Shown: one piece after another, positions 11,671-34,484 of the stretch
Layout of the letters: every line of letters starts with the position of its first letter
How positions within the stretch are numbered: the stretch's first letter is position 1
Assembly (NCBI GenBank): GCA_973895155.1
Contig: CCZZQB010000056.1
Location: 1-34,484, forward strand
Reading direction: 5' to 3'
Length of the DNA: 34,484 bases
Origin: Marsupella aquatica
Taxonomy: Eukaryota > Plantae > Marchantiophyta
Made by a program: the position numbers and the translations under genes
The notes under the pieces: model-generated
Database searches by the model: none
What the model saw: only the letters and a program-made list of their open reading frames with translations
Told to the model about the DNA's origin: nothing

Positions 11671-13113
11671 ATGGCAAAACGAAAGTTTTGGAAAGTGAAC
11701 AAACAAATGAAGGAAGATGGCAAATATGAGTATGAGAAAATGAAATTTGCAATGGACGTTTTCATTCAAATTTTTTCAGCGATCATGATATTGCATCCAC
11801 GTTCACAAAAGTTTGCCATGTTATTTCTTCTTCAAGAAGATAATATTTTTCAAGCATTTGTACAAAATGTATTGAATATTAAACATACTGTATCGAAAGC
11901 AATGATATATAATGCTTACTATAGATTTAAAGAAATTGGACCACCAAAAACCTTTACTTCTTGCGCATGGGAGAATATCTGTGATATTCTCGATCATCAT
12001 TATTCTTTAGATTCAGTACCCTATAGTATAAGAAAATACATCCATTTTCTTAGGTCATCTACCTATATTGAAGAGTGTGTAAAAAGAGAAAAAAATATGC
12101 TAGAGAAAAAAGAAATGGTGTTTGAAAAAATTATTTCCCAATTTTGGTGGGGAAATGTGAATCCAATGGAATTAGTGCAAGGATTTTGGGGAAGAGTTGA
12201 TGATGAAGGTGAATGTTTTTATCGCTTAGAATTAGAAAAAACATTACAAATACTTTCTAGAAGAAAAAACAAAGGGAAAGAAATTGAAATTGAAGAGGCA
12301 CCTATATATAGGGAGCTTCCAATTTCTTACGTTGAAATCCAAAAAACAAAACAGGTTACGGAGATCTATGATAAAATCTCAAGTGAGCTAGTGGGTATCC
12401 ATATTCGCCCTAAAGATGTTCATAAATCTTTTACTATATTGATACGAACTTATCTTAAAGATCTTTTTTGTGCTCATCCAAGTTCAAAAAGATCTAAAAC
12501 TAGAGCATCCTATATGAGTGAAATGGTGGGGTTCGGTCCATTTCACCATACATGGACACCTGGAAAAAATGTTACATCTTTCTACACTCATAGTAATAAG
12601 TTAGTAAAAGCTTCAAAACCTTTAAAAGATTTTGGTAGATTTATTGATCGATTTGCACATGGGGCTGTGGTAGAAATTTTAATGTCTATGTGGTTTAGAT
12701 ATTATCCTACGTTATTACATACTTTTCTTAGATGTTGTAACCCTTACTTAGAAACTTCCCAATATATTAAGGAAGGTGTTGAGATACCATTTTTTGATAA
12801 GCACATGAAGAAGGGACCTCCTGCTTATCAACTATTCATTACTAGAGATTATTGTTCACGTTTTCATGTGGACAATGATAGGACAGAGTGGACACTAGCA
12901 TATACTAGTCACCCTGATGAACATATTTCACCAGTTGATTTTGTATTTGCCAAACATGGATTTATATTACCTTTGCATAATGGTGATTTATTTGCATTCA
13001 AAGGCAAACATCTCCATGGTATGGCTTTTAGAAAACCAACAGAAAATCCTGCATATATTGCAGCTTTAGTTATGAATAGTGGCTTAGGACAATTATTAAA
13101 TAGAATAGAGTAA
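11671..13113 (+). CDS. TET/JBP-like Fe(II)-dependent dioxygenase, paralogue B (480 aa)
   Basis: Intact ORF. H399-V-D401 is at 12865-12873 and H449 at 13015-13017. The 50-residue His-to-His spacing matches Naegleria Tet1 and trypanosome JBP1. It also has the DFVF..HG..LPLHNGDLFAF strand pattern and an upstream MVGFGP motif shared with paralogue A (MTGYGP). Confidence 0.78.
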   Translation: MAKRKFWKVNKQMKEDGKYEYEKMKFAMDVFIQIFSAIMILHPRSQKFAMLFLLQEDNIFQAFVQNVLNIKHTVSKAMIYNAYYRFKEIGPPKTFTSCAWENICDILDHHYSLDSVPYSIRKYIHFLRSSTYIEECVKREKNMLEKKEMVFEKIISQFWWGNVNPMELVQGFWGRVDDEGECFYRLELEKTLQILSRRKNKGKEIEIEEAPIYRELPISYVEIQKTKQVTEIYDKISSELVGIHIRPKDVHKSFTILIRTYLKDLFCAHPSSKRSKTRASYMSEMVGFGPFHHTWTPGKNVTSFYTHSNKLVKASKPLKDFGRFIDRFAHGAVVEILMSMWFRYYPTLLHTFLRCCNPYLETSQYIKEGVEIPFFDKHMKKGPPAYQLFITRDYCSRFHVDNDRTEWTLAYTSHPDEHISPVDFVFAKHGFILPLHNGDLFAFKGKHLHGMAFRKPTENPAYIAALVMNSGLGQLLNRIE

Positions 13114-17229: not shown

Positions 17230-17263
17230 GACCCCAGTTGCCACCATGATTTCACAACCCTTC
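17230..17263 (-). repeat. 34-bp exact copy of helicase coding sequence (18959-18992)
   Basis: GACCCCAGTTGCCACCATGATTTCACAACCCTTC is identical at both loci and encodes KGCEIMVATGV (around helicase motif V). Confidence 0.9.
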
Positions 17264-17911: not shown

Positions 17912-20900
17912 TCACCGAAATTCAGGATACTTGATCCTCACAATGGTTGCTACAAGACGCATAAAATTGTTGCCCAGAGCCTCAGGACTTGTAGACACAA
18001 CCCATTCACACAGCTCCTGGTCACTTTTCCCTTTGATTTCAGGAATTGCTCGGAATAAATCGCTCTGTATGTTATCAAATCGCCATGCCTTCCACACAAA
18101 AAGCCGCAATCTCTCTCCTGATTCATCTTCACACTGATCTCCATACAGCCCTTCATGAAATCTCATCCCACTAGGCTGGTGTGGGAAGTGACACTTGAAA
18201 CAAGTGTCTGGTCGAGAAGGAAACTTGTTATCGCAATTTGCACGGTTGTGTGTTCCTAGACACTTCACACATCGTCCCCGTACATAAGGACATTGCAAAA
18301 TACCATGAGGAACACTCTTTGAGAGGGGACTCCAACACATCAAGCACTTTTTCCTATCCCCAGCAAATTTACGGATGATACAAATCTTATTCATGGCTTC
18401 GTCAATTCTTTGTTTGATGAGTGTTGGTCGAGCTCTTGCCACAACCGTGGTTGTGGTTCCTTTGCCTTGGGATGATCCGAGTGATGATGCTGGTGTTGTT
18501 CTTTCACCTGGTGCTGTAACCCTAACACTCTGTCCTCCTTGTATGTTTTGGGAGATGCTCCCCTGAGATACAATTTCAACCACTTCTGACCTAGCTTGTG
18601 ATAATTCTTCGGCCTCATATTCCATTGGTAGTTCCTGATTGTCTGCTGCTTGGGAGCATATGTCACAAGGAATTGCATCCGGGATGAGGTAACACATCTG
18701 TGGCTTACCATCAACGCTAGCATGTAGTGCAAAGCGACGACACATTTTTGTCTCCTCAATCCATTTGTTTGGAATCTTGAAGTTGGAGTCCATCCTCAAG
18801 GCCTCATTGCGGTAGCTGGAGTTAGAAACAACAGTGCTTATTGCTAATAAACCATCACGCCCAGCTCGGCCAGATTCCTGATGAAATTGCTCAAAGGACC
18901 TGAAATTACCTCTGTGAATTACAAGTCTGATTGACTTGTAATTATAGCCAGAACCAATGACCCCAGTTGCCACCATGATTTCACAACCCTTCGACTCCCA
19001 CTTCTTCAAGGTTTTCACGGTGTCTGCTGTGCTACATCCTGCATGCAAAAATGTATAGCACAAGTTCCTGGCTTCGAGTAGCTTTGCCATCTCTTGGACT
19101 TCATCTCTTGTTAGGCAATAGACAATGGCCCGGTCATGAACCAGGCTAGATCTCTTCCAATCTTGAAGCTGTCTAACTATTTCTCCATCCATGTCAGGCA
19201 CTTCCACAACCATGTATCGGATGTTTGGCCTAACAGTAGAAGAACGAACCCAATGTAATCTTGAACCCAAAGTCAGTTCGATATCAGATTGTTGTGTGGG
19301 TGGTAATGTCGCTGTTAATCCTATAATTTGACAGGGAACTTTCATTAGAGAAATCAGATTTCTCATTTTTGGACGGAAATGACACTGTAGTGTATGAATC
19401 TCATCAAAAACAATCGAATGCAATCTTTGTGTAGCTTGCAAGTGGTTTGCAAAGACACCAAATGTATCTGAATCAGCTGCAGTCTCGATAGATACAAAAA
19501 CAATTGCAGGTGTTACTCCTATCCCGAGTGCAAATCCACTTGTAAACACAGTGTGACCAATTCCTGCTTTTCTGCATTCAGATAAGTGACCCGATATGAG
19601 AGATTTGAATGGGACTACCACAATCACTGTTTTGTCCATCAATGTGGAAGGGGCCATGAAAATCAATGACTTTCCTGTTCCAGTGGGAAGTACAGTTACA
19701 AAATCCACAGTGTTTTCAATAGCCAAAGCAACAGAGATTGCTTGTTCAGTTGACCTCCACCTTTTGTGACCCAACTTGTGTAGAGCTATGGAAGCTCTTA
19801 TACTTGTGTCGTGACAGATGTGCAGTGCCGAATCAACATCTCCCACAACTGATGTTGATGGTTCTCCATAGGCAGGGCAATAAACAACCCTTGTCTTGCT
19901 TGGAACATGATCAATTTCAAGCTCAATGTCATGACGTGGACGTAGAACAGTAGTGGTTCTTGGAAAAGGATCTAGTGTGACTTCCCTGCAACCTGTTGTT
20001 GAGCTATCCAGATGAATCAATCTTGGGGACTTATCCGAAAGATTAAGCAATGCATGCCACTTATCTGTAAATATTCGGAATGCTCTCAAGAGATGTCCAT
20101 CAATAGCTCTTAAATCTTTTACACTTTGAGCATAATGATGTCCCATTGTAGCTGTTGTATGTCCACCTGCCACATCTACAATATCATCAAGATCTTGAGT
20201 GCGTTGGTCTCGAATCTTTTCTGAAAAAAATGCTGCTAGGTGTCGGTATTCTGAAAGCCCGAATGTGACTCCACAACGCTTAAAGAAATTGTTGTGTATG
20301 CTCTTGGAAAGATCATGTGCATCTTGCTTTTTATCCATATCAACGAACCAACAATCATCATAATTACGGGCAACCTCCTTTCCCCATATTTTCTGTGCAA
20401 CATAAGATTGTGTAGGCCTCACCAAACAAAAGTATACCAGAAACAGAGTTCTTAAAGAACTTGGAAGAAACCGTATAAGTGGTTTCATTGGAGCACCTGT
20501 ATTTGCACCTTTATGATAGGTTTGAAAGAGCGCTATTGTATGATGCTCTAACAATTTTGTTGTTGGATCATCATCTGGGCCTGCTGTTGCCCAATAAAAT
20601 GACCTCTCGCTTGTGGCTGTGTTGCGAATCAAGAAACTGTTGTACTCTTCGCCCCTTGCTGGTAGACCGGCAGTGAAATGTATAAGCAGATTCAATTTTT
20701 CTTGTAAATCAGAGCAAGCAGTCATCCACTTATAAAGTGTGATATCATTCCAAATGACATCATTTCGATCTGTCCGCCCGAGAATAAAGTGTCCTCTAAT
20801 CTTAGGATCAACAAACAAGTGTGTTAGTAGATCGAGGCCATGTTGCTGAAGAATCCGGTTGCGAGGATCTATGACAAAGTTGTACCCAACTTCTGTGTTG

Positions 20901-22873
20901 TTGACATCGTCGTAAATAGCACGACTCTCCTTAAGTAATTTGTCAACCCAATCTGTTCGGAGACCAAGAAGCACATCACAATTTAAAATTGAGTGGGCTT
21001 CTTGAATAATAGCATGCACCATATCTCGAAAATTGTCGATTGTAATAGATTCACCATCAACTAGACATGCTGTATTATTGGCATTCAATGGTACTAGTCT
21101 TGGCCATACTGGAGTCCCTGCAGTAATCCTATTTGCCAAGCGCAGAGATTGCGATACAATAGTAAATGGAGTAGGTAGTGCTATGTCACTTAAATATTGA
21201 AGAAGTCGATCAACTTCTTCATTAAGAATGGTGCTTGGGTTTTTATGCCAAAAACATTGTGCAAGGTGCATCAAAATGGTCACCCTAGCCCAATATTTGA
21301 GTATCGCCATTGGTTGTGTAAGATGACGAACATGCCAAAATGAATACTCTTCTGCTTCTGGACTGTGGCCAACTTTTATGAGTGAATGTAAAATAAGAAA
21401 CCGAGTGAAAATACAGTTCGCTGCTCTTCCTGCTTCAAGTGTTGCAGGCATCTTTGGAGTCCAAAGATGAATCAACACATTATGTAGAACAGCTAAATCA
21501 ACATTGTCAATAGAATTGTCATCTAATTCATTGAGTTGACTCATGAATTTTTGAAGAGCAATTTCCATTTCTTCTCTGTTTGTTTGAAAAACATGAATGT
21601 CCGAACTAAGCTCATTAGAAGATGATCGAAGCAAGCAGAGAATGAATTCTGTGATTATATCACAGTACCTACTCCTTGATGATTTTGAGTTCAATTGATT
21701 GAATCCCACTGCAACATCATCATTGATATTTGTCTTCTCCACTAGTCTTCTCAATCTGTAATCCACCTCTTTAAGAACCAAATCTTGTACATTGTTCATG
21801 TAGATAGTCACCACTTGACTGACATATGAGAGTGGAGATTTGCCCTGCTTTGGTGGTGGGAGCATCTGTGCTTTCACCTGCAAAAATGGTACCCCTTTTG
21901 GCATGAATTGGGCCGCAAGCTCATGCCATTTAGACTGTGCTAGCCATGGAGTTAGCTCAGCAATTGGAGGTAGAAGTTCTAACCGCAAAGACTGAAAATG
22001 GTCATCAAACTCCTTTGTGATTATAGCCCTCAAACTTTTAGATTGCAAGTGACAGTCATCCCCATCGAGATTGAGATTGTGATGTTGAACACCAAAGTAT
22101 TTGAGGCCTATAACACGATCTGAGAGGATTTGAACTTGGCATTCACTCTTCACATTGACATAGGACAACTCAGGATGTTTTCTCAAACGATGATTGGACA
22201 TTGACCTTTTCTCCCCACAATAGTAGATGCATTGTTTGCAAGAAAAGCCGTGTCGAATGACAACACCTGGTACTGGAGAAAGCAATGCAGCTGGTGGATC
22301 TCTTGTATATGGTAATATGGATGTATCATCCATGCTTGTAAAAGAGAACTGTTGTAAGCTCCTCAATAGTTGATGACTGTCGTAGTCTGATGCTATTCGA
22401 TGACACCTTGATTTCTCCCGTTGATGCTTTTGAACATGATGAATGATATTGATATTTTCATTGTATATGAGTACCGAATGACACTCTATACATACAAGGA
22501 AAACCAATTCCTCATGACGAACAACGCAGAGATTAACACTTCTCAAGATCTCTGGTGTACCAGAATGATCTGGTGTAATGCACAATCCTTCATTAACCGC
22601 CAAGTCGTGTGGATCAACAAATCTTTCGACTTGATTAACATGGATTGTGTCATAGTGTCGGCGAAGACTATCGCCACGTGTGTAATACTGAGAACACATA
22701 TTATCGGGGCATGCGAACATCCCATTTTCAGACTTGTGGAGGATCTCCACAGTGCCATCGCAATGCTTGAATTTGAACGTCATCCTGTGCTCAAAACGTT
22801 TGTGAGCATCTCTTGCTCTTGCTGATTGAAAAATCTGCTCACACGCACTACATGGAAAAATGGTTGTCTCCAT
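17912..22873 (-). CDS. Telomere-linked-helicase-like protein: C2H2 + DUF3505-like Zn region + tyrosine-recombinase-like domain + RecQ-family helicase + C-terminal Zn knuckles (1653 aa)
   Basis: Intact, uninterrupted ORF. Helicase motifs are LPTGTGKS (K1068), VVVPFKSL, FDEIH (1156-1160), LTATLPP, VATGVIGSG and HQESGRAGRDG, plus the RecQ Zn motif CRR...C...CDIC. N-terminal C2H2 fingers are CSAC..H...H and CPDNMC..H...H. DUF3505-like motifs are LVCIEC...HVQKH and GFSCKQC...H...H...CQVQ...YFGV. The central region has TAGLPARGEE, YHK, SEYRH and GGHT...HHY. Confidence 0.88.
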   Translation of the reverse strand: METTIFPCSACEQIFQSARARDAHKRFEHRMTFKFKHCDGTVEILHKSENGMFACPDNMCSQYYTRGDSLRRHYDTIHVNQVERFVDPHDLAVNEGLCITPDHSGTPEILRSVNLCVVRHEELVFLVCIECHSVLIYNENINIIHHVQKHQREKSRCHRIASDYDSHQLLRSLQQFSFTSMDDTSILPYTRDPPAALLSPVPGVVIRHGFSCKQCIYYCGEKRSMSNHRLRKHPELSYVNVKSECQVQILSDRVIGLKYFGVQHHNLNLDGDDCHLQSKSLRAIITKEFDDHFQSLRLELLPPIAELTPWLAQSKWHELAAQFMPKGVPFLQVKAQMLPPPKQGKSPLSYVSQVVTIYMNNVQDLVLKEVDYRLRRLVEKTNINDDVAVGFNQLNSKSSRSRYCDIITEFILCLLRSSSNELSSDIHVFQTNREEMEIALQKFMSQLNELDDNSIDNVDLAVLHNVLIHLWTPKMPATLEAGRAANCIFTRFLILHSLIKVGHSPEAEEYSFWHVRHLTQPMAILKYWARVTILMHLAQCFWHKNPSTILNEEVDRLLQYLSDIALPTPFTIVSQSLRLANRITAGTPVWPRLVPLNANNTACLVDGESITIDNFRDMVHAIIQEAHSILNCDVLLGLRTDWVDKLLKESRAIYDDVNNTEVGYNFVIDPRNRILQQHGLDLLTHLFVDPKIRGHFILGRTDRNDVIWNDITLYKWMTACSDLQEKLNLLIHFTAGLPARGEEYNSFLIRNTATSERSFYWATAGPDDDPTTKLLEHHTIALFQTYHKGANTGAPMKPLIRFLPSSLRTLFLVYFCLVRPTQSYVAQKIWGKEVARNYDDCWFVDMDKKQDAHDLSKSIHNNFFKRCGVTFGLSEYRHLAAFFSEKIRDQRTQDLDDIVDVAGGHTTATMGHHYAQSVKDLRAIDGHLLRAFRIFTDKWHALLNLSDKSPRLIHLDSSTTGCREVTLDPFPRTTTVLRPRHDIELEIDHVPSKTRVVYCPAYGEPSTSVVGDVDSALHICHDTSIRASIALHKLGHKRWRSTEQAISVALAIENTVDFVTVLPTGTGKSLIFMAPSTLMDKTVIVVVPFKSLISGHLSECRKAGIGHTVFTSGFALGIGVTPAIVFVSIETAADSDTFGVFANHLQATQRLHSIVFDEIHTLQCHFRPKMRNLISLMKVPCQIIGLTATLPPTQQSDIELTLGSRLHWVRSSTVRPNIRYMVVEVPDMDGEIVRQLQDWKRSSLVHDRAIVYCLTRDEVQEMAKLLEARNLCYTFLHAGCSTADTVKTLKKWESKGCEIMVATGVIGSGYNYKSIRLVIHRGNFRSFEQFHQESGRAGRDGLLAISTVVSNSSYRNEALRMDSNFKIPNKWIEETKMCRRFALHASVDGKPQMCYLIPDAIPCDICSQAADNQELPMEYEAEELSQARSEVVEIVSQGSISQNIQGGQSVRVTAPGERTTPASSLGSSQGKGTTTTVVARARPTLIKQRIDEAMNKICIIRKFAGDRKKCLMCWSPLSKSVPHGILQCPYVRGRCVKCLGTHNRANCDNKFPSRPDTCFKCHFPHQPSGMRFHEGLYGDQCEDESGERLRLFVWKAWRFDNIQSDLFRAIPEIKGKSDQELCEWVVSTSPEALGNNFMRLVATIVRIKYPEFR

Positions 22874-23599
22874 CGATCCTACACATCAATGTCACAAGCT
22901 CGTGCCATAAATCGCCATGTACTATCGGGAATAGATTACAAGAAGCGCAGGAATAGATTACAGGAAGCTCATGCAAGTGTTCTTTGTCTCTAGTATCTAC
23001 CAAGCTACTGAACTCTCAAGCATAGTTATAATTGAGCTTGCGCTTGAGTTCTGATCATGATGTTACAAGGTAGTCTATTGGAGTTCAGTTCTCTGTAAAA
23101 AATTCAGAGCAATGTAATAAACTAAAACCGTAAAGATTTGGAGTCTGAAGACATCAATGTAAAGCTAATAAATGTGTGCACAAAAATAGATAATCATTGC
23201 ATGGCCAGCTATGCAGTCAACCCCCAGAGCACAACTGACAGCTACATGCCCAATGCATTTTGCATACATATATAGATTCAAAATCATAATCCCATGCATA
23301 TATTCGCATTTGTTAAGAGAATTTAAGGAATTATGTCCTTCATGAATTAAAGCTTGTCCCAATAGATTACTTTTATTTAATTTACCTGACAAAATATTAT
23401 GGGGCTTGGAAGCTTGTAGAATGATTCTGTTCAATTCCCAAAGGTAGATTATCGCAGTTCAACTTGCCGCCGACATTTGCAAAGTGACTAGCTGCAACCA
23501 CTGTGTAATGCGATACATGTGGGCAACCACTGTATAATGTGATGTGGCAACTCTACCATCTAATGAAGACAAAATGCTTGAACTAAGGACATCAATGTT

Positions 23600-25070
23600 T
23601 GGTTGTAGATTGGGTTAGGAAATGTGGGTTGTGGCATGGGTTTAGGGTCTTATGTTGGGAGTTGAGAAAGACTGGAGTTACAAAATTTGGTGTGGTGTTG
23701 GGGCTGAGGGGGTTGGGAGTTGTGTGTTGGGGATTGAGGGGTTGTGGGTTCAAGGGGAAGTTGTGTCTTGGGTTGGGTAGGTTGAGAGTTGTATGTTGGG
23801 GAGCTTGGTTGCAGATTGGGTTAGGAAATTTGGGTTGTGGCATGGGTTGGGGGAGATGTGTTGGGGGTTGAGAAAGTCTGGAGTTAGGGAGTTAATTTGT
23901 TGTAGAGTTGGGTGTTGGGGGTTAAGGGATTCATTTGGGGAGTTGTGTCTTGGGTTGGGTAGGTTGAGAATTCTGTGTTGGGAGTTGAGTAAGTTGGGGA
24001 GTTTGGTTGTAGGTTAGGTTAGGAAATGTGGGTTGTGGCATGGGTTGGGGGAGATGTGTTGGGGGTTGAGAAAGTTTGGAGTTAGGGAGTTAATTTGTTG
24101 TAGAGTTGGGTGTTGGGGGTTGAGGGATTCATTTGGGGAGTTGTGTCTTGGGTTGGGTAGGTTGAGAGATTTGTGTTGGGAGTTAACACAGTTTGGAGTT
24201 ACAAAATTTGGTGTTGTGTTGGGGTGTGAGGGGGTTGGGAGTTGTGTGTTGGGGATTGAGGGGTGTTGGGGATTGTTGGGTGTTGGGGGTTGAGGGATTG
24301 GAAGTTGTGTCTTGGGTTGGGTAGATAGATAGTTGTATGTTGGGGGTTAAGGGAGTTGGGGAGTTATGTGTTTATCGGTTGAAGGAGTTTGGAGTTTGGT
24401 TGTGGGTGGGGGTTGACATTGTGGGTTGGGGGAGTCGTGGGTTGGGGATTGAGGGGTTGTGGGTTCAAGGGGAAGTTGTGTCTTGGGTTGGGTAGGTTGA
24501 GAGTTGTGTGTTGGGAGTTGAGTGAGTTGGGGAGTTTGGTTGTGGGTTGTGGCATGGGTTGGGGGAGATGTGTTGGGGGTTGAGAAAGTCTGGAGTTAGG
24601 GATTTAATTTGTTGTAGAGTTGGGTGTTGGGGGTTGAGGGATTCATTTGGGGAGTTGTGTCTTGGGTTGGGTAGGTTGAGAGATTTATGTTGGGAGTTGA
24701 GAAAGTTTGGAGTTACAAAATTTGGTGTAGTGTTGGGGGGCTGAGGGGGTTGGGAGTTGTGTGTTGGGGATTAAGGGGTTGTGGGTTCAAGGGGAAGTTG
24801 TGTCTTGGGTTGGGTAGGTTGAGAGTTGTGTGTTGGGGGTTGAGTGAGTTGGGGATTTAATTTGTTGTAGAGTTGGGTGTTGGGGGTTCAGGGATTGGAA
24901 GTTGTGTCTTGGGTTGGGTAGGTAGACAGTTGTATGTTGGGGGTTGAGGGAGTTGGGGAGTTATGTGTTGGAGGTTGAAGGAGTTTGGAGTTTGGTTGTG
25001 GGTGGGGGTTGACATTGTGGGTTGGGGGAGTTGTGGGTTGGGAGTTGCCGGGGAAGTTGTTTGTTGGGAT
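23600..25070 (+). repeat. G/T-rich modular minisatellite with telomere-like strand bias
   Basis: The 20-mer TTGTGTCTTGGGTTGGGTAG occurs at 23761, 23943, 24141, 24305, 24476, 24655, 24798 and 24902 (spacing 104-198 bp), mixed with other recurring modules. The plus strand has very few C. Confidence 0.92.
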
Positions 25071-26030: not shown

Positions 26031-26130
26031 CTAAACCCTAAACCCTAAACTGATGGACCACTTCGAAAACAAGGGGCGAGAACTCGGGGCCAAACTCGGG
26101 GCGAGAAACCCTAAACCCTAAACCCTAAAG
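26031..26130 (-). repeat. Two short interstitial telomeric tracts in inverted orientation (CCCTAAA on + strand)
   Basis: TAAACCCTAAACCCTAAAC at 26031-26049 and AAACCCTAAACCCTAAACCCTAAA at about 26106-26129. Confidence 0.9.
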
Positions 26131-32610: not shown

Positions 32611-34484
32611 AGGGTTTAGGGTTTAGGGTTTAGGGTTTTTAGGGGTTTAGGGTTTAGGGTTTAGGGTTTAGTTTAGGGTTTAGGGTTTAGGGTTTAGGGT
32701 TTAGGGTTTAGGGTTTTTTAGGGTTTAGGGTTTAGGGTTTAGGGTTTAGGGTTTAGGGTTTAGGGTTTAGGGTTTAGGGTTTAGGGTTTAGGGTTTAGGG
32801 TTTAGGGTTTAGGGTTTAGGGTTTAGGGTTTAGGGTTTAGGGTTTAGGGTTTAGGGTTTAGGGTTTAGGGTTTAGGGTTTAGGGTTTAGGGTTTAGGGTT
32901 TAGGGTTTAGGGTTTAGGGTTTAGGGTTTAGGGTTTAGGGTTTAGGGTTTAGGGTTTAGGGTTTTAGTTTTAGGGTTTAGGGTTTAGGGTTTAGGGTTTA
33001 GGGTTTATGGGTTTAGGGTTTAGGGTTTAGGGTTTAGGGTTTAGGGTTTAGGGTTTAGGGTTTAGGGTTTAGGGTTTAGGGTTTAGGGTTTAGGGTTTAG
33101 GGTTTAGGGTTTAGGGTTTAGGGTTTAGGGTTTAGGGTTTAGGGTTTAGGGTTTAGGGTTTAGGGTTTAGGGTTTAGGGTTTAGGGTTTAGGGTTTAGGG
33201 TTTAGGGTTTAGGGTTTAGGGTTTAGGGTTTAGGGTTTAGGGTTTAGGGTTTAGGGTTTAGGGTTTAGGGTTTAGGGTTTAGGGTTTAGGGTTTAGGGTT
33301 TAGGGTTTAGGGTTTAGGGTTTAGGGTTTAGGGTTTAGGGTTTAGGGTTTAGGGTTTAGGGTTTAGGGTTTAGGGTTTAGGGTTTAGGGTTTAGGGTTTA
33401 GGGTTTAGGGTTTAGGGTTTAGGGTTTAGGGTTTAGGGTTTAGGGTTTAGGGTTTAGGGTTTAGGGTTTAGGGTTTAGGGTTTAGGGTTTAGGGTTTAGG
33501 GTTTAGGGTTTAGGGTTTAGGGTTTAGGGTTTAGGGTTTAGGGTTTAGGGTTTAGGGTTTAGGGTTTAGGGTTTAGGGTTTAGGGTTTAGGGTTTAGGGT
33601 TTAGGGTTTAGGGTTTAGGGTTTAGGGTTTAGGGTTTAGGGTTTAGGGTTTAGGGTTTAGGGTTTAGGGTTTAGGGTTTAGGGTTTAGGGTTTAGGGTTT
33701 AGGGTTTAGGGTTTAGGGTTTAGGGTTTAGGGTTTAGGGTTTAGGGTTTAGGGTTTAGGGTTTAGGGTTTAGGGTTTAGGGTTTAGGGTTTAGGGTTTAG
33801 GGTTTAGGGTTTAGGGTTTAGGGTTTAGGGTTTAGGGTTTAGGGTTTAGGGTTTAGGGTTTAGGGTTTAGGGTTTAGGGTTTAGGGTTTAGGGTTTAGGG
33901 TTTAGGGTTTAGGGTTTAGGGTTTAGGGTTTAGGGTTTAGGGTTTAGGGTTTAGGGTTTAGGGTTTAGGGTTTAGGGTTTAGGGTTTAGGGTTTAGGGTT
34001 TAGGGTTTAGGGTTTAGGGTTTAGGGTTTAGGGTTTAGGGTTTAGGGTTTAGGGTTTAGGGTTTAGGGTTTAGGGTTTAGGGTTTAGGGTTTAGGGTTTA
34101 GGGTTTAGGGTTTAGGGTTTAGGGTTTAGGGTTTAGGGTTTAGGGTTTAGGGTTTAGGGTTTAGGGTTTAGGGTTTAGGGTTTAGGGTTTAGGGTTTAGG
34201 GTTTAGGGTTTAGGGTTTAGGGTTTAGGGTTTAGGGTTTAGGGTTTAGGGTTTAGGGTTTAGGGTTTAGGGTTTAGGGTTTAGGGTTTAGGGTTTAGGGT
34301 TTAGGGTTTAGGGTTTAGGGTTTAGGGTTTAGGGTTTAGGGTTTAGGGTTTAGGGTTTAGGGTTTAGGGTTTAGGGTTTAGGGTTTAGGGTTTAGGGTTT
34401 AGGGTTTAGGGTTTAGGGTTTAGGGTTTAGGGTTTAGGGTTTAGGGTTTAGGGTTTAGGGTTTAGGGTTTAGGGTTTAGGGTTT
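32611..34484 (+). repeat. Terminal telomere, (TTTAGGG)n, about 267 units
   Basis: Continuous TTTAGGG to the end of the window with the G-strand on +. Variant units occur only in the proximal about 450 bp. Confidence 0.99.

What the first reader, a model, noticed from the sequence alone, without database searches (positions are those of the whole stretch)
20120..20700. Tyrosine-recombinase-like catalytic set inside the telomere-linked helicase
Seen: R740 (TAGLPARGEE), K788 (FQTYHK), S874-x-x-R877-H878, H905 (AGGHT) and Y914, with His-to-Tyr spacing of exactly 9. Known: tyrosine recombinases use R...K...HxxR...H/W...Y with the same 9-residue spacing (lambda Int H333/Y342, Cre W315/Y324), and protelomerases are members of this fold. 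Inference: the ORF is a recombinase-helicase fusion that could excise or circularise itself, promote exchange between chromosome ends, or resolve hairpin ends. That would make it an autonomous subtelomeric mobile element rather than a plain helicase gene.
Basis: partly seen in the sequence, partly recalled or inferred. Interest (0 to 1): 0.92.

Follow-up and report, generated by a model that had tools for sequence, protein, structure and literature searches.

The report
Tyrosine-recombinase module inside telomere-linked helicase
The unexplained "TLH domain" of a telomere-linked RecQ helicase gene, found here intact about 10 kb from a plant-type telomere, has the fold and conserved active-site residues of a DNA-cutting-and-rejoining tyrosine recombinase, which suggests that these chromosome-end genes can recombine DNA as well as unwind it.

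Summary
R740, K788, S874, R877, H878, H905 and Y914 are all in the 1653-aa minus-strand ORF (17912-22873).

- **Conservation:** In 55 homologues averaging about 23% identity, the six best-conserved of 401 columns are R740, E743, K788, R877, Y914 (all 55/55) and H905 (54/55). The His-to-Tyr spacing is 9 in 54/55. S874, the canonical HxxR histidine position, is variable.
- **Relatives:** The same module is in S. pombe Tlh1/Tlh2 and S. cerevisiae Y'-Help1. It corresponds to the fungal "TLH domain", which the two TLH papers I read treat as having no known function.
- **Not shown:** No sequence profile links it significantly to known recombinases. Mobility is untested: this window has no terminal repeats, and the contig-level read data gave no excision or circle evidence. 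The ordinary (TTTAGGG)n end argues against hairpin-end resolution.
- **Earlier scan notes:** First-reader notes on other pieces of this genome (s1-327367, s1-327435) report further copies of the same fusion.

Verdict: the recombinase module is real and probably catalytically competent. Its role as a mobile element is plausible but unproven.

The parts
17912..22873 (-). [quoted passage not shown]
   Evidence: The only copy in this window.
22169..22873 (-). N-terminal C2H2 / OrsD-type zinc-finger region (residues 1-235).
   Evidence: Pfam OrsD PF12013 at residues 120-233, E 3e-7. C2H2 patterns at residues 8-29, 55 and 212-233. The same domain is present in 5 of 6 full-length homologues scanned.
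21107..21838 (-). Helical domain (residues about 346-589) resembling the N-terminal core-binding domain of tyrosine recombinases.
20024..21106 (-). Tyrosine-recombinase-fold catalytic domain (residues about 590-950). It corresponds to the 'TLH domain' of the fungal literature.
20645..20656 (-). R740 (Arg-I) and E743 (acidic residue at R+3), in the motif TAGLPARGEE.
   Evidence: Both 55/55 invariant. The R+3 acidic residue is also present in XerD, Cre and lambda Int.
20510..20512 (-). K788, the candidate beta-hairpin lysine.
   Evidence: 55/55 invariant. It lies in the turn between model strands 219-226 and 239-243. The K-G context matches XerD.
20240..20254 (-). S874-E-Y-R877-H878: Arg-II, with a non-conserved residue at the canonical His-II position.
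   Evidence: R877 55/55; H878 is H in 45 and Q in 10; S874 is variable. hhalign places S874 opposite lambda H308 and R877 opposite R311, but the match is not significant (E 0.097).
20132..20161 (-). H905 (His-III) and Y914 (candidate nucleophile), 9 residues apart.
   Evidence: H905 54/55, Y914 55/55, spacing 9 in 54/55. Both align in register with lambda Int H333/Y342 and XerD H270/Y279. Y914 lies in a low-confidence loop of the model (residues 349-361).
18851..19744 (-). RecQ-type SF2 helicase core (residues 1044-1341).
   Evidence: Pfam DEAD 1.2e-16 and Helicase_C 3e-15. Motif I at residue 1063, DEIH at 1157, motif III at 1187, QESGRAGRDG at 1332.
18179..18742 (-). RecQ zinc-binding Cys cluster (residues 1378-1407) and C-terminal Cys/His-rich knuckles (residues 1510-1565).
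   Evidence: Sequence motifs only.
23597..25052 (+). Degenerate G-rich, telomere-like minisatellite directly upstream of the ORF start. Its G strand has the same orientation as the terminal array.
   Evidence: GC skew 0.67. A link to the gene is not shown.
32611..34484 (+). Terminal (TTTAGGG)n telomere array, about 267 units, 9.7 kb from the ORF start.

Best explanation
[quoted passage not shown] Its central 'TLH domain' is a tyrosine-recombinase module.

Shown:
- The module has a catalytic domain of the Xer/Cre/Int fold, preceded by a core-binding-like helical domain.
- It carries an invariant Arg-Lys-Arg-His-Tyr pentad plus Glu at R+3.
- It sits between N-terminal C2H2/OrsD zinc fingers and an intact RecQ-type helicase.

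Inferred:
- The module is catalytically competent. Y914 would attack a DNA phosphodiester to form a covalent 3'-phosphotyrosine intermediate, and the break would be resealed or exchanged.
- The most likely role is conservative strand exchange at or between chromosome ends. This would spread or maintain the gene unit in subtelomeres, in the manner of a Crypton or of Y' circles.
- The zinc fingers would provide site recognition. The helicase would unwind or branch-migrate the recombination intermediate.

The missing conserved His-II makes this a distinct branch. Its chemistry may be closer to the type IB topoisomerase pentad.

My separate odds are: fold 0.97; catalytically active 0.75; self-propagating element 0.4. 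The overall confidence given (0.6) is for the statement as a whole, weighted toward the active-recombinase-module core.
For: - **Residues:** Present and exactly placed.
- **Conservation:** The five invariant columns, plus H905 at 54/55, are the top six of 401 columns in 55 homologues at about 23% identity. The H-to-Y spacing of 9 holds in 54/55.
- **Upstream domain:** It best matches YR core-binding domains.
- **Motif contexts:** They match XerD, Cre and lambda Int fetched here: acidic residue at R+3, K-G, xxRH, GH(S/T)...Y. The box II alignments are in register.
- **Independent language-model search:** It returns Phage_integrase, NDC10_II and Integrase_2 clusters. The structure of its top hit resembles XerC.
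- **Family architecture:** OrsD, then this domain, then DEAD/Helicase_C recurs in relatives.
- **Yeast relatives:** S. pombe Tlh1/2 (E 2.7e-14, TM 0.69) and Y'-Help1 (E 3e-8) share the module.
- **Selection:** dN/dS against the Calypogeia copy is about 0.13 for the catalytic domain and 0.09 for the core-binding-like domain.
- **Automatic annotation:** One AFDB cluster representative of the family is named 'Tyr recombinase domain-containing protein'.
- **Position and copies:** The ORF is telomere-adjacent. Other copies in the same genome are reported only by unchecked scan notes.
Against: - No significant sequence-level link to characterised recombinases. Pfam Phage_integrase is not hit by this protein or by any of 55 homologues, even at E up to 10. 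The profile against PDB sequences finds nothing. hhalign E values are 0.1-0.4, and one XerD run aligned out of register.
- The canonical His-II is absent and variable.
- Y914 lies in a low-confidence loop. Clustering of the residues in space could not be measured.
- No element boundaries, target-site duplications or repeats flank the ORF.
- Homology to the Calypogeia copy ends at the ORF, as expected for an ordinary gene.
- Contig data show no circular or excision junction.
- Expression is unknown; no listed run could be identified as RNA.
- dS is saturated, so the dN/dS values are rough.
Confidence: 0.6

Rival explanations
1. The recombinase-fold domain works as a helicase-coupled nicking-closing (type IB topoisomerase-like) or junction-resolving activity that serves the host. 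It would relieve torsion or resolve recombination intermediates during telomere replication or recombination-based telomere maintenance, without moving the gene.
For: - The conserved set is the pentad R-K-R-H-Y without His-II, as in type IB topoisomerases.
- It is fused to a RecQ helicase. By established knowledge, RecQ enzymes act together with topoisomerases (RecQ/Sgs1/BLM with Top3).
- Purifying selection is apparent.
- No transposon boundaries are seen.
Against: - The upstream domain resembles recombinase core-binding domains.
- The family is multi-copy and patchy. A Botrytis preprint reports it present in one strain and absent in two others. The Calypogeia copies are decayed. This pattern is typical of selfish DNA rather than of a host maintenance gene.
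Confidence: 0.25
2. The domain is an exapted, catalytically dead recombinase fold used only for DNA binding, as in Ndc10 or the Crypton-derived DUF3504 proteins. The protein would then be functionally a plain helicase with an unusual DNA-binding module.
For: - No Pfam integrase hit.
- His-II is missing.
- Y914 lies in a poorly modelled loop.
Against: The catalytic Arg, Lys, Arg, His and Tyr are the most conserved positions of the whole domain across 55 sequences at about 23% identity, with fixed H-Y spacing. That is hard to explain for a mere binding scaffold. The best matches are active Xer/Cre enzymes, not Ndc10.
Confidence: 0.1
3. It is a telomere resolvase (protelomerase-like) that makes or resolves covalently closed hairpin chromosome ends.
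Against: - The chromosome end here is an ordinary 1.87-kb (TTTAGGG)n array with the G strand running 3' outward.
- Protelomerases are the weakest matches in the superfamily.
- No inverted-repeat resolution site is seen near the gene.
Confidence: 0.02
4. The residue pattern is a chance resemblance, and the region is a family-specific helical domain unrelated to recombinases.
For: Sequence-profile comparisons with lambda Int, Cre, XerD, Pfam and PDB are all non-significant.
Against: In the unbiased structural search, 31 of the top 31 hits among 48,161 chains belong to one superfamily. An independent language-model search also returns integrase families.
Confidence: 0.03

Closest known systems
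Fungal telomere-linked helicases (S. pombe Tlh1/Tlh2, Magnaporthe TLH1, Ustilago UTASa, Fusarium and Botrytis TLHs) and the S. cerevisiae Y' element helicase Y'-Help1
   Same: - Same architecture: C2H2 fingers, 'TLH domain', RecQ motifs (bioRxiv 10.1101/2024.02.27.582403).
- Telomere-adjacent position.
- The domain superposes on Tlh1 residues 658-1074 (E 2.7e-14, TM 0.69) and on Y'-Help1 (E 3e-8).
   Different: - It sits in a genome with plant-type TTTAGGG telomeres. Its nearest relative is in the liverwort Calypogeia fissa (62% identity over the module, 58% over the whole ORF). Fungal relatives are at most 40% identical.
- It has a 14-residue insertion between R740 and K788 relative to most of the family.
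- The two TLH papers I read describe the TLH domain only as a TLH-specific conserved domain, and one says TLH protein function is undetermined. No paper in the searched library pairs TLH with tyrosine recombinases.
Simple Xer-type tyrosine recombinases (archaeal XerA, XerH, XerD) and Cre
   Same: - Two-domain layout with a helical N-terminal domain.
- Arg-I with an acidic residue at R+3, hairpin Lys, Arg-II followed by His, His-III, and Tyr 9 residues later.
   Different: - No conserved His-II.
- Longer, with insertions: the module is about 600 residues against about 300.
- Not detectable by Pfam PF00589.
- Fused to zinc fingers and a helicase.
Eukaryotic tyrosine-recombinase elements: Crypton, DIRS/Ngaro, Starship 'captains' (DUF3435)
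   Same: They are eukaryotic genes encoding a tyrosine-recombinase fold. Cryptons are essentially a single ORF without terminal repeats (established knowledge; PMC7175516), which would fit the absence of repeats here.
   Different: - No GCR1_C, DUF3435, reverse-transcriptase or methyltransferase domains.
- A RecQ helicase fusion was not mentioned in the recombinase-element papers I checked.
- Mobility, target-site duplications and dispersed copies are not demonstrated here.
Type IB topoisomerases (vaccinia/variola, bacterial, human Topo I)
   Different: The upstream domain looks like a recombinase core-binding helical bundle. Xer-type recombinases match better.

Membership tests
Tyrosine recombinase / type IB topoisomerase superfamily | Catalytic-domain fold | tested here: met
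   [not shown]
Tyrosine recombinase / type IB topoisomerase superfamily | Arg-I, Arg-II and the nucleophilic Tyr conserved | tested here: met
   R740, R877 and Y914 are invariant in 55/55 homologues.
Tyrosine recombinase / type IB topoisomerase superfamily | Beta-hairpin Lys, and His/Trp-III nine residues before the Tyr | tested here: met
   K788 is 55/55 and lies in a hairpin turn of the model. H905 is 54/55. Spacing is 9 in 54/55, the same as XerD, Cre and lambda Int.
Canonical tyrosine recombinases (R-H-R-Y tetrad) | His-II of the HxxR motif | tested here: not met
   The position is Ser in this protein and variable in the family (S12, N11, A11, R8, Q4, K3, H1 and so on).
Canonical tyrosine recombinases | Significant match to the family's sequence profile (Pfam PF00589 or a solved relative) | tested here: not met
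   No Pfam hit for this protein or any of 55 homologues at E up to 10. The profile against PDB finds nothing. hhalign E values are 0.1-0.4.
Canonical tyrosine recombinases | N-terminal core-binding domain forming a clamp with the catalytic domain | tested here: inconclusive
   [not shown]
Canonical tyrosine recombinases | Catalytic residues converge on one pocket; covalent 3'-phosphotyrosine intermediate | not testable with these tools
   Model coordinates are not exposed. Biochemistry is needed.
Telomere-linked helicase (TLH) family | C2H2 fingers, TLH domain, RecQ helicase motifs, subtelomeric position | tested here: met
   (Tlh1/2, E 2.7e-14). The ORF start is 9.7 kb from the telomere array. 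Family definition taken from 10.1101/2024.02.27.582403.
Crypton / Starship / DIRS transposable elements | Family-specific accessory domains (GCR1_C; DUF3435; RT/RNase H/methyltransferase) | tested here: not met
   None was found by Pfam at E up to 1.
Crypton / Starship / DIRS transposable elements | Defined termini, target-site duplication, evidence of transposition | tested here: inconclusive
   No flanking repeats. Homology to the Calypogeia copy ends at the ORF. Contig-level reads are uninformative. Other genomic copies could not be fetched.
Protelomerase (telomere resolvase) | Hairpin chromosome ends and a palindromic resolution site | tested here: not met
   [not shown]

The most novel reading that the evidence does not exclude
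Telomere-linked helicase genes are a previously unrecognised superfamily of eukaryotic selfish DNA elements. The family includes S. pombe tlh1/2, budding-yeast Y' elements and this liverwort copy. They would be mobilised or amplified at chromosome ends by their own helicase-coupled tyrosine recombinase, for example through excised circles that re-integrate at telomere-proximal sites. The family would have crossed from fungi into liverworts by horizontal transfer.
Probability: 0.3. Interest if true: 0.9.

Novelty: new variant of a known kind. Interest (0 to 1): 0.78.

Why it matters
TLH and Y' helicase genes sit at chromosome ends in many fungi, and their conserved "TLH domain" has had no assigned function. 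The 2024 Fusarium preprint says TLH protein function is still undetermined.

Assigning the domain to the tyrosine-recombinase fold, with an invariant catalytic pentad, gives a concrete and testable biochemical activity: DNA breakage and rejoining coupled to a RecQ helicase. It also suggests why these genes are multi-copy, patchy and telomere-bound, and how Y'-type units might circularise and spread. Tractable experiments follow directly, such as Tyr-to-Phe alleles in S. pombe tlh genes or S. cerevisiae YRF1.

An intact copy next to a plant-type telomere, with a liverwort as nearest relative, raises the further question of fungus-to-bryophyte transfer of such an element.

One caveat on novelty. 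UniProt's automatic annotation already names one family representative 'Tyr recombinase domain-containing protein'. My literature search covers only open-access papers and preprints, so the link may have been noted elsewhere.

Tried and rejected
- **Direct sequence detection.** Pfam on the whole ORF and on residues 560-960, Pfam on all 55 homologues at E up to 10, and phmmer and profile searches against PDB sequences returned no recombinase hit.
- **hhalign of the family profile against single sequences of Cre, lambda Int and XerD**. None was significant. Lambda box II and the XerD H-Y segment aligned in register. A low-mact XerD run and both Cre runs gave spurious N-terminal alignments.
- **A search with E. 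coli XerD to build a diverse recombinase profile**. It returned only homologues about 90% identical, which are useless for profile-profile comparison. That search was wasted.
- **Word-indexed homologue search**. It found only the Calypogeia protein. The exhaustive HMMER search was needed to see the family.
- **Exact-sequence look-up of the ORF product**. Not on record.
- **Sequencing runs**. Only assembler contigs of unknown library type were available, with no RNA evidence and no circle or empty-site evidence. The only joint is a 174-bp skip upstream of the ATG in one low-depth contig.
- **Search for element termini**. None was found around the ORF. The only repeat touching it is an exact 34-nt duplicate.
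- **Contigs of two more distant homologues** (L006, L007). They contain no telomere repeats, so they say nothing about telomere linkage.
- **Hairpin-telomere resolution.** Rejected because the end is a normal telomere array.
- **Catalytic residues in Tlh1/2 and Y'-Help1.** Their sequences could not be obtained by reference, so this was not checked.
Full report
**What is there.** The window ends in about 267 units of TTTAGGG (32611-34484), with the G-rich strand running 3' outward. This is a plant-type telomere. A single uninterrupted minus-strand ORF of 1653 codons (17912-22873) starts 9.7 kb inside the array. Pfam recognises an OrsD/C2H2 zinc-finger region (residues 120-233) and an SF2 helicase core (DEAD 1044-1194, Helicase_C 1246-1341). 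It finds nothing between residues 235 and 1040. The helicase has RecQ-type motifs: PTGTGKS at 1063, DEIH at 1157, TATLP at 1187, QESGRAGRDG at 1332 and a Cys cluster at 1378-1407.

**Check of the observation.** H905 to Y914 is 9 residues.

**Is it more than chance?**
- An exhaustive HMMER search with residues 560-960 found 1172 cluster representatives at E <= 0.001.
- I aligned 55 of them that cover the whole region, with 20-37% identity to the query apart from one 63% liverwort sequence (A1).
- Only five of the query's 401 positions are invariant: R740, E743, K788, R877 and Y914. H905 is 54/55. These are the six best-conserved columns.
- The H-to-Y spacing is 9 in 54/55 sequences.
- E743 corresponds to the acidic residue three positions after Arg-I in XerD, Cre and lambda Int.
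- S874 occupies the position of the canonical His of HxxR and is not conserved. The family signature is therefore R(xxE)...K...R(H/Q)...H-x8-Y.

**Fold.**
- AlphaFold2 with A1 gave a confident model (pLDDT 87.7, pTM 0.88).
- Foldseek against the PDB ranked Cre, lambda Int, XerA and other integrases on top, but with weak E-values of 0.1-1 because of whole-chain superposition.
- The order of secondary-structure elements fits the family. R740 sits at the start of a short helix after a long helix. K788 is in a beta-hairpin turn. R877 is in a helix. H905 comes just after a helix. Y914 is in a flexible segment before the last helix.
- A protein-language-model search independently returned Phage_integrase, NDC10_II and Integrase_2 clusters. 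The structure of its top fungal hit resembles XerC.

**What sequence methods do not show.** Neither this protein nor any of the 55 homologues hits Pfam Phage_integrase, even at E up to 10. The family profile finds no recombinase among PDB sequences. hhalign against lambda Int aligns S874/R877/H905/Y914 with H308/R311/H333/Y342, and against XerD aligns H905/Y914 with H270/Y279, but at E 0.1-0.3. Other runs gave spurious alignments. My attempt to build a diverse recombinase profile failed because the search returned only near-identical XerD sequences. Homology therefore rests on fold plus active-site conservation, not on sequence statistics.

**Which family is it?**
- The same module superposes on S. 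pombe Tlh1/Tlh2 (residues about 658-1074, E 2.7e-14, TM 0.69) and on the S. cerevisiae Y' element helicases (E 3e-8 to 1e-5). XerC/D/A follow.
- AlphaFold-DB cluster representatives that match at E 1e-12 to 4e-18 are named 'DNA 3'-5' helicase' or 'C2H2-type domain-containing protein'. One is auto-named 'Tyr recombinase domain-containing protein'.
- Five of the six full-length homologues scanned repeat the architecture OrsD, this domain, DEAD/Helicase_C. The sixth, P0040, lacks a detectable OrsD hit.
- Named members come from Basidiomycota (Ceratobasidium, Leucocoprinus) and Blastocladiomycota (Sorochytrium).
- This is the telomere-linked helicase (TLH) family.
- The two TLH papers I read define it by C2H2 fingers, a roughly 250-residue 'TLH domain' upstream of the helicase, and RecQ motifs. 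One of them states that TLH protein function is undetermined (10.1101/2024.02.27.582403; 10.1101/2022.03.07.483234).
- Full-text searches pairing TLH, tlh1 or YRF1 with tyrosine recombinase or Crypton found nothing. The library covers only open-access papers and preprints.

**The plant context.**
- The only close relative is in the liverwort Calypogeia fissa (62% identity over the module).
- Its locus L004 holds a near full-length copy (58% identity) broken into five ORFs. L005, at 8.5 Mb of a 46.8-Mb scaffold, holds a degenerate 33%-identity copy.
- DNA similarity between the window and L004 is confined to the ORF.
- Against L004, dN/dS is about 0.13 for the catalytic domain and 0.09 for the core-binding-like domain. 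dS is saturated, so these values are rough.
- Unchecked scan notes report a second intact copy and a partial copy elsewhere in this genome, one of them bracketed by long direct repeats. I found no such repeats here.

**Mobility.** Nothing in this window defines an element. There are no terminal inverted or direct repeats, and the only repeat is an exact 34-nt duplicate (17230-17263 and 18959-18992). Public runs holding the locus are available only as assembler contigs. They cover the ORF at about the same depth as its flank. They show a minor variant copy carrying seven transitions in 20584-20776, and a 174-bp skip upstream of the ATG. They show no head-to-tail or empty-site junction, and contigs cannot exclude one. 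The 'autonomous mobile element' reading is therefore plausible by analogy but untested. The analogies are that Cryptons are single-ORF elements without terminal repeats (PMC7175516) and that circular Y' DNA is known in yeast (my own knowledge, not checked here). Hairpin-end resolution is unlikely given the ordinary telomere array and the weak protelomerase matches.

**Mechanism proposed.**
- Shown: the domain architecture, the fold, and the conservation of the pentad.
- Inferred: Y914 forms a 3'-phosphotyrosine link, with R740, R877, K788 and H905 stabilising the transition state and leaving group as in Xer/Cre or topo IB enzymes. The zinc fingers and the core-binding-like domain would choose the site. 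The RecQ motor would unwind or branch-migrate the intermediate.
- The outcome could be exchange between chromosome ends or excision and re-integration of the gene unit (favoured, about 0.4). It could instead be a host-serving nick-and-reseal or junction-resolving activity (about 0.25). A dead DNA-binding fold seems unlikely (about 0.1) given the invariant catalytic set.

**Verdict.** The fold and catalytic-set interpretation is strongly supported, and the transposon and hairpin interpretations are not. The gene is a new, plant-resident member of the TLH family. Reading the TLH domain as a helicase-fused tyrosine recombinase lacking His-II makes it a new variant of a known enzyme kind. This reading also extends to the yeast tlh genes and Y' elements.

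Noticed in passing
window 11671-13113 (+): A 480-aa ORF in an AT-rich stretch (GC about 31%). It has no significant Pfam hit. Its protein-language-model neighbours are fungal clusters (Mucoromycota, Basidiomycota), some carrying 2OG-FeII_Oxy_6 or Tet_JBP, at scores 0.91-0.92. It may be a second fungal-type gene in the same plant-type subtelomere, in line with scan note s1-327395.
   Followed up: partly
window 23597-25052: A 1.5-kb degenerate G-rich, telomere-like minisatellite (units of about 50-200 nt, GC skew 0.67). Its G strand is oriented like the terminal array, and it lies directly upstream of the TLH ORF start. It is reminiscent of the internal telomere-like tracts next to Y' elements. 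A functional link has not been tested.
   Followed up: partly
window 17230-17263 and 18959-18992: An exact 34-nt direct repeat. One copy is inside the helicase coding region and the other lies about 650 bp downstream of the stop codon. Assembler contigs break there. Its origin is unexplained.
   Followed up: no
window 20584-20776 and 22878-23053: In run X4, a minor contig population (about a quarter of the depth) carries seven transitions inside the recombinase catalytic region. One low-depth contig skips 174 bp just upstream of the ATG. These are probably a diverged paralogue or allele.
   Followed up: no
window 26036-26049 and 26109-26129: Two short interstitial (CCCTAAA)2-3 tracts, in the opposite orientation to the terminal array. 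They could be telobox-like promoter motifs or relics of telomere repeats.
   Followed up: no
L004 8679-13636 and L005 8109-12776 (Calypogeia fissa GCA_965154635.1): The liverwort Calypogeia carries a 58%-identity copy broken into five ORFs. It also carries a degenerate 33%-identity copy at an internal chromosomal site (8.5 Mb of a 46.8-Mb scaffold). No telomere repeats lie within 10 kb of either. The family is therefore integrated in liverwort chromosomes and decays there.
   Followed up: partly
Swiss-Prot AlphaFold models P0CT33, Q1RKN3, P40105 and others: S. pombe Tlh1/Tlh2 and the S. cerevisiae Y' element helicases contain the same recombinase-fold module (E 2.7e-14 to 1e-5). Whether they keep the catalytic residues could not be checked here.
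   Followed up: partly
window residues 1510-1565 of the ORF (18179-18346): A C-terminal Cys/His-rich knuckle cluster follows the helicase. A scan note (s1-327581) reports a stand-alone homologue of this tail elsewhere in the genome.
   Followed up: no
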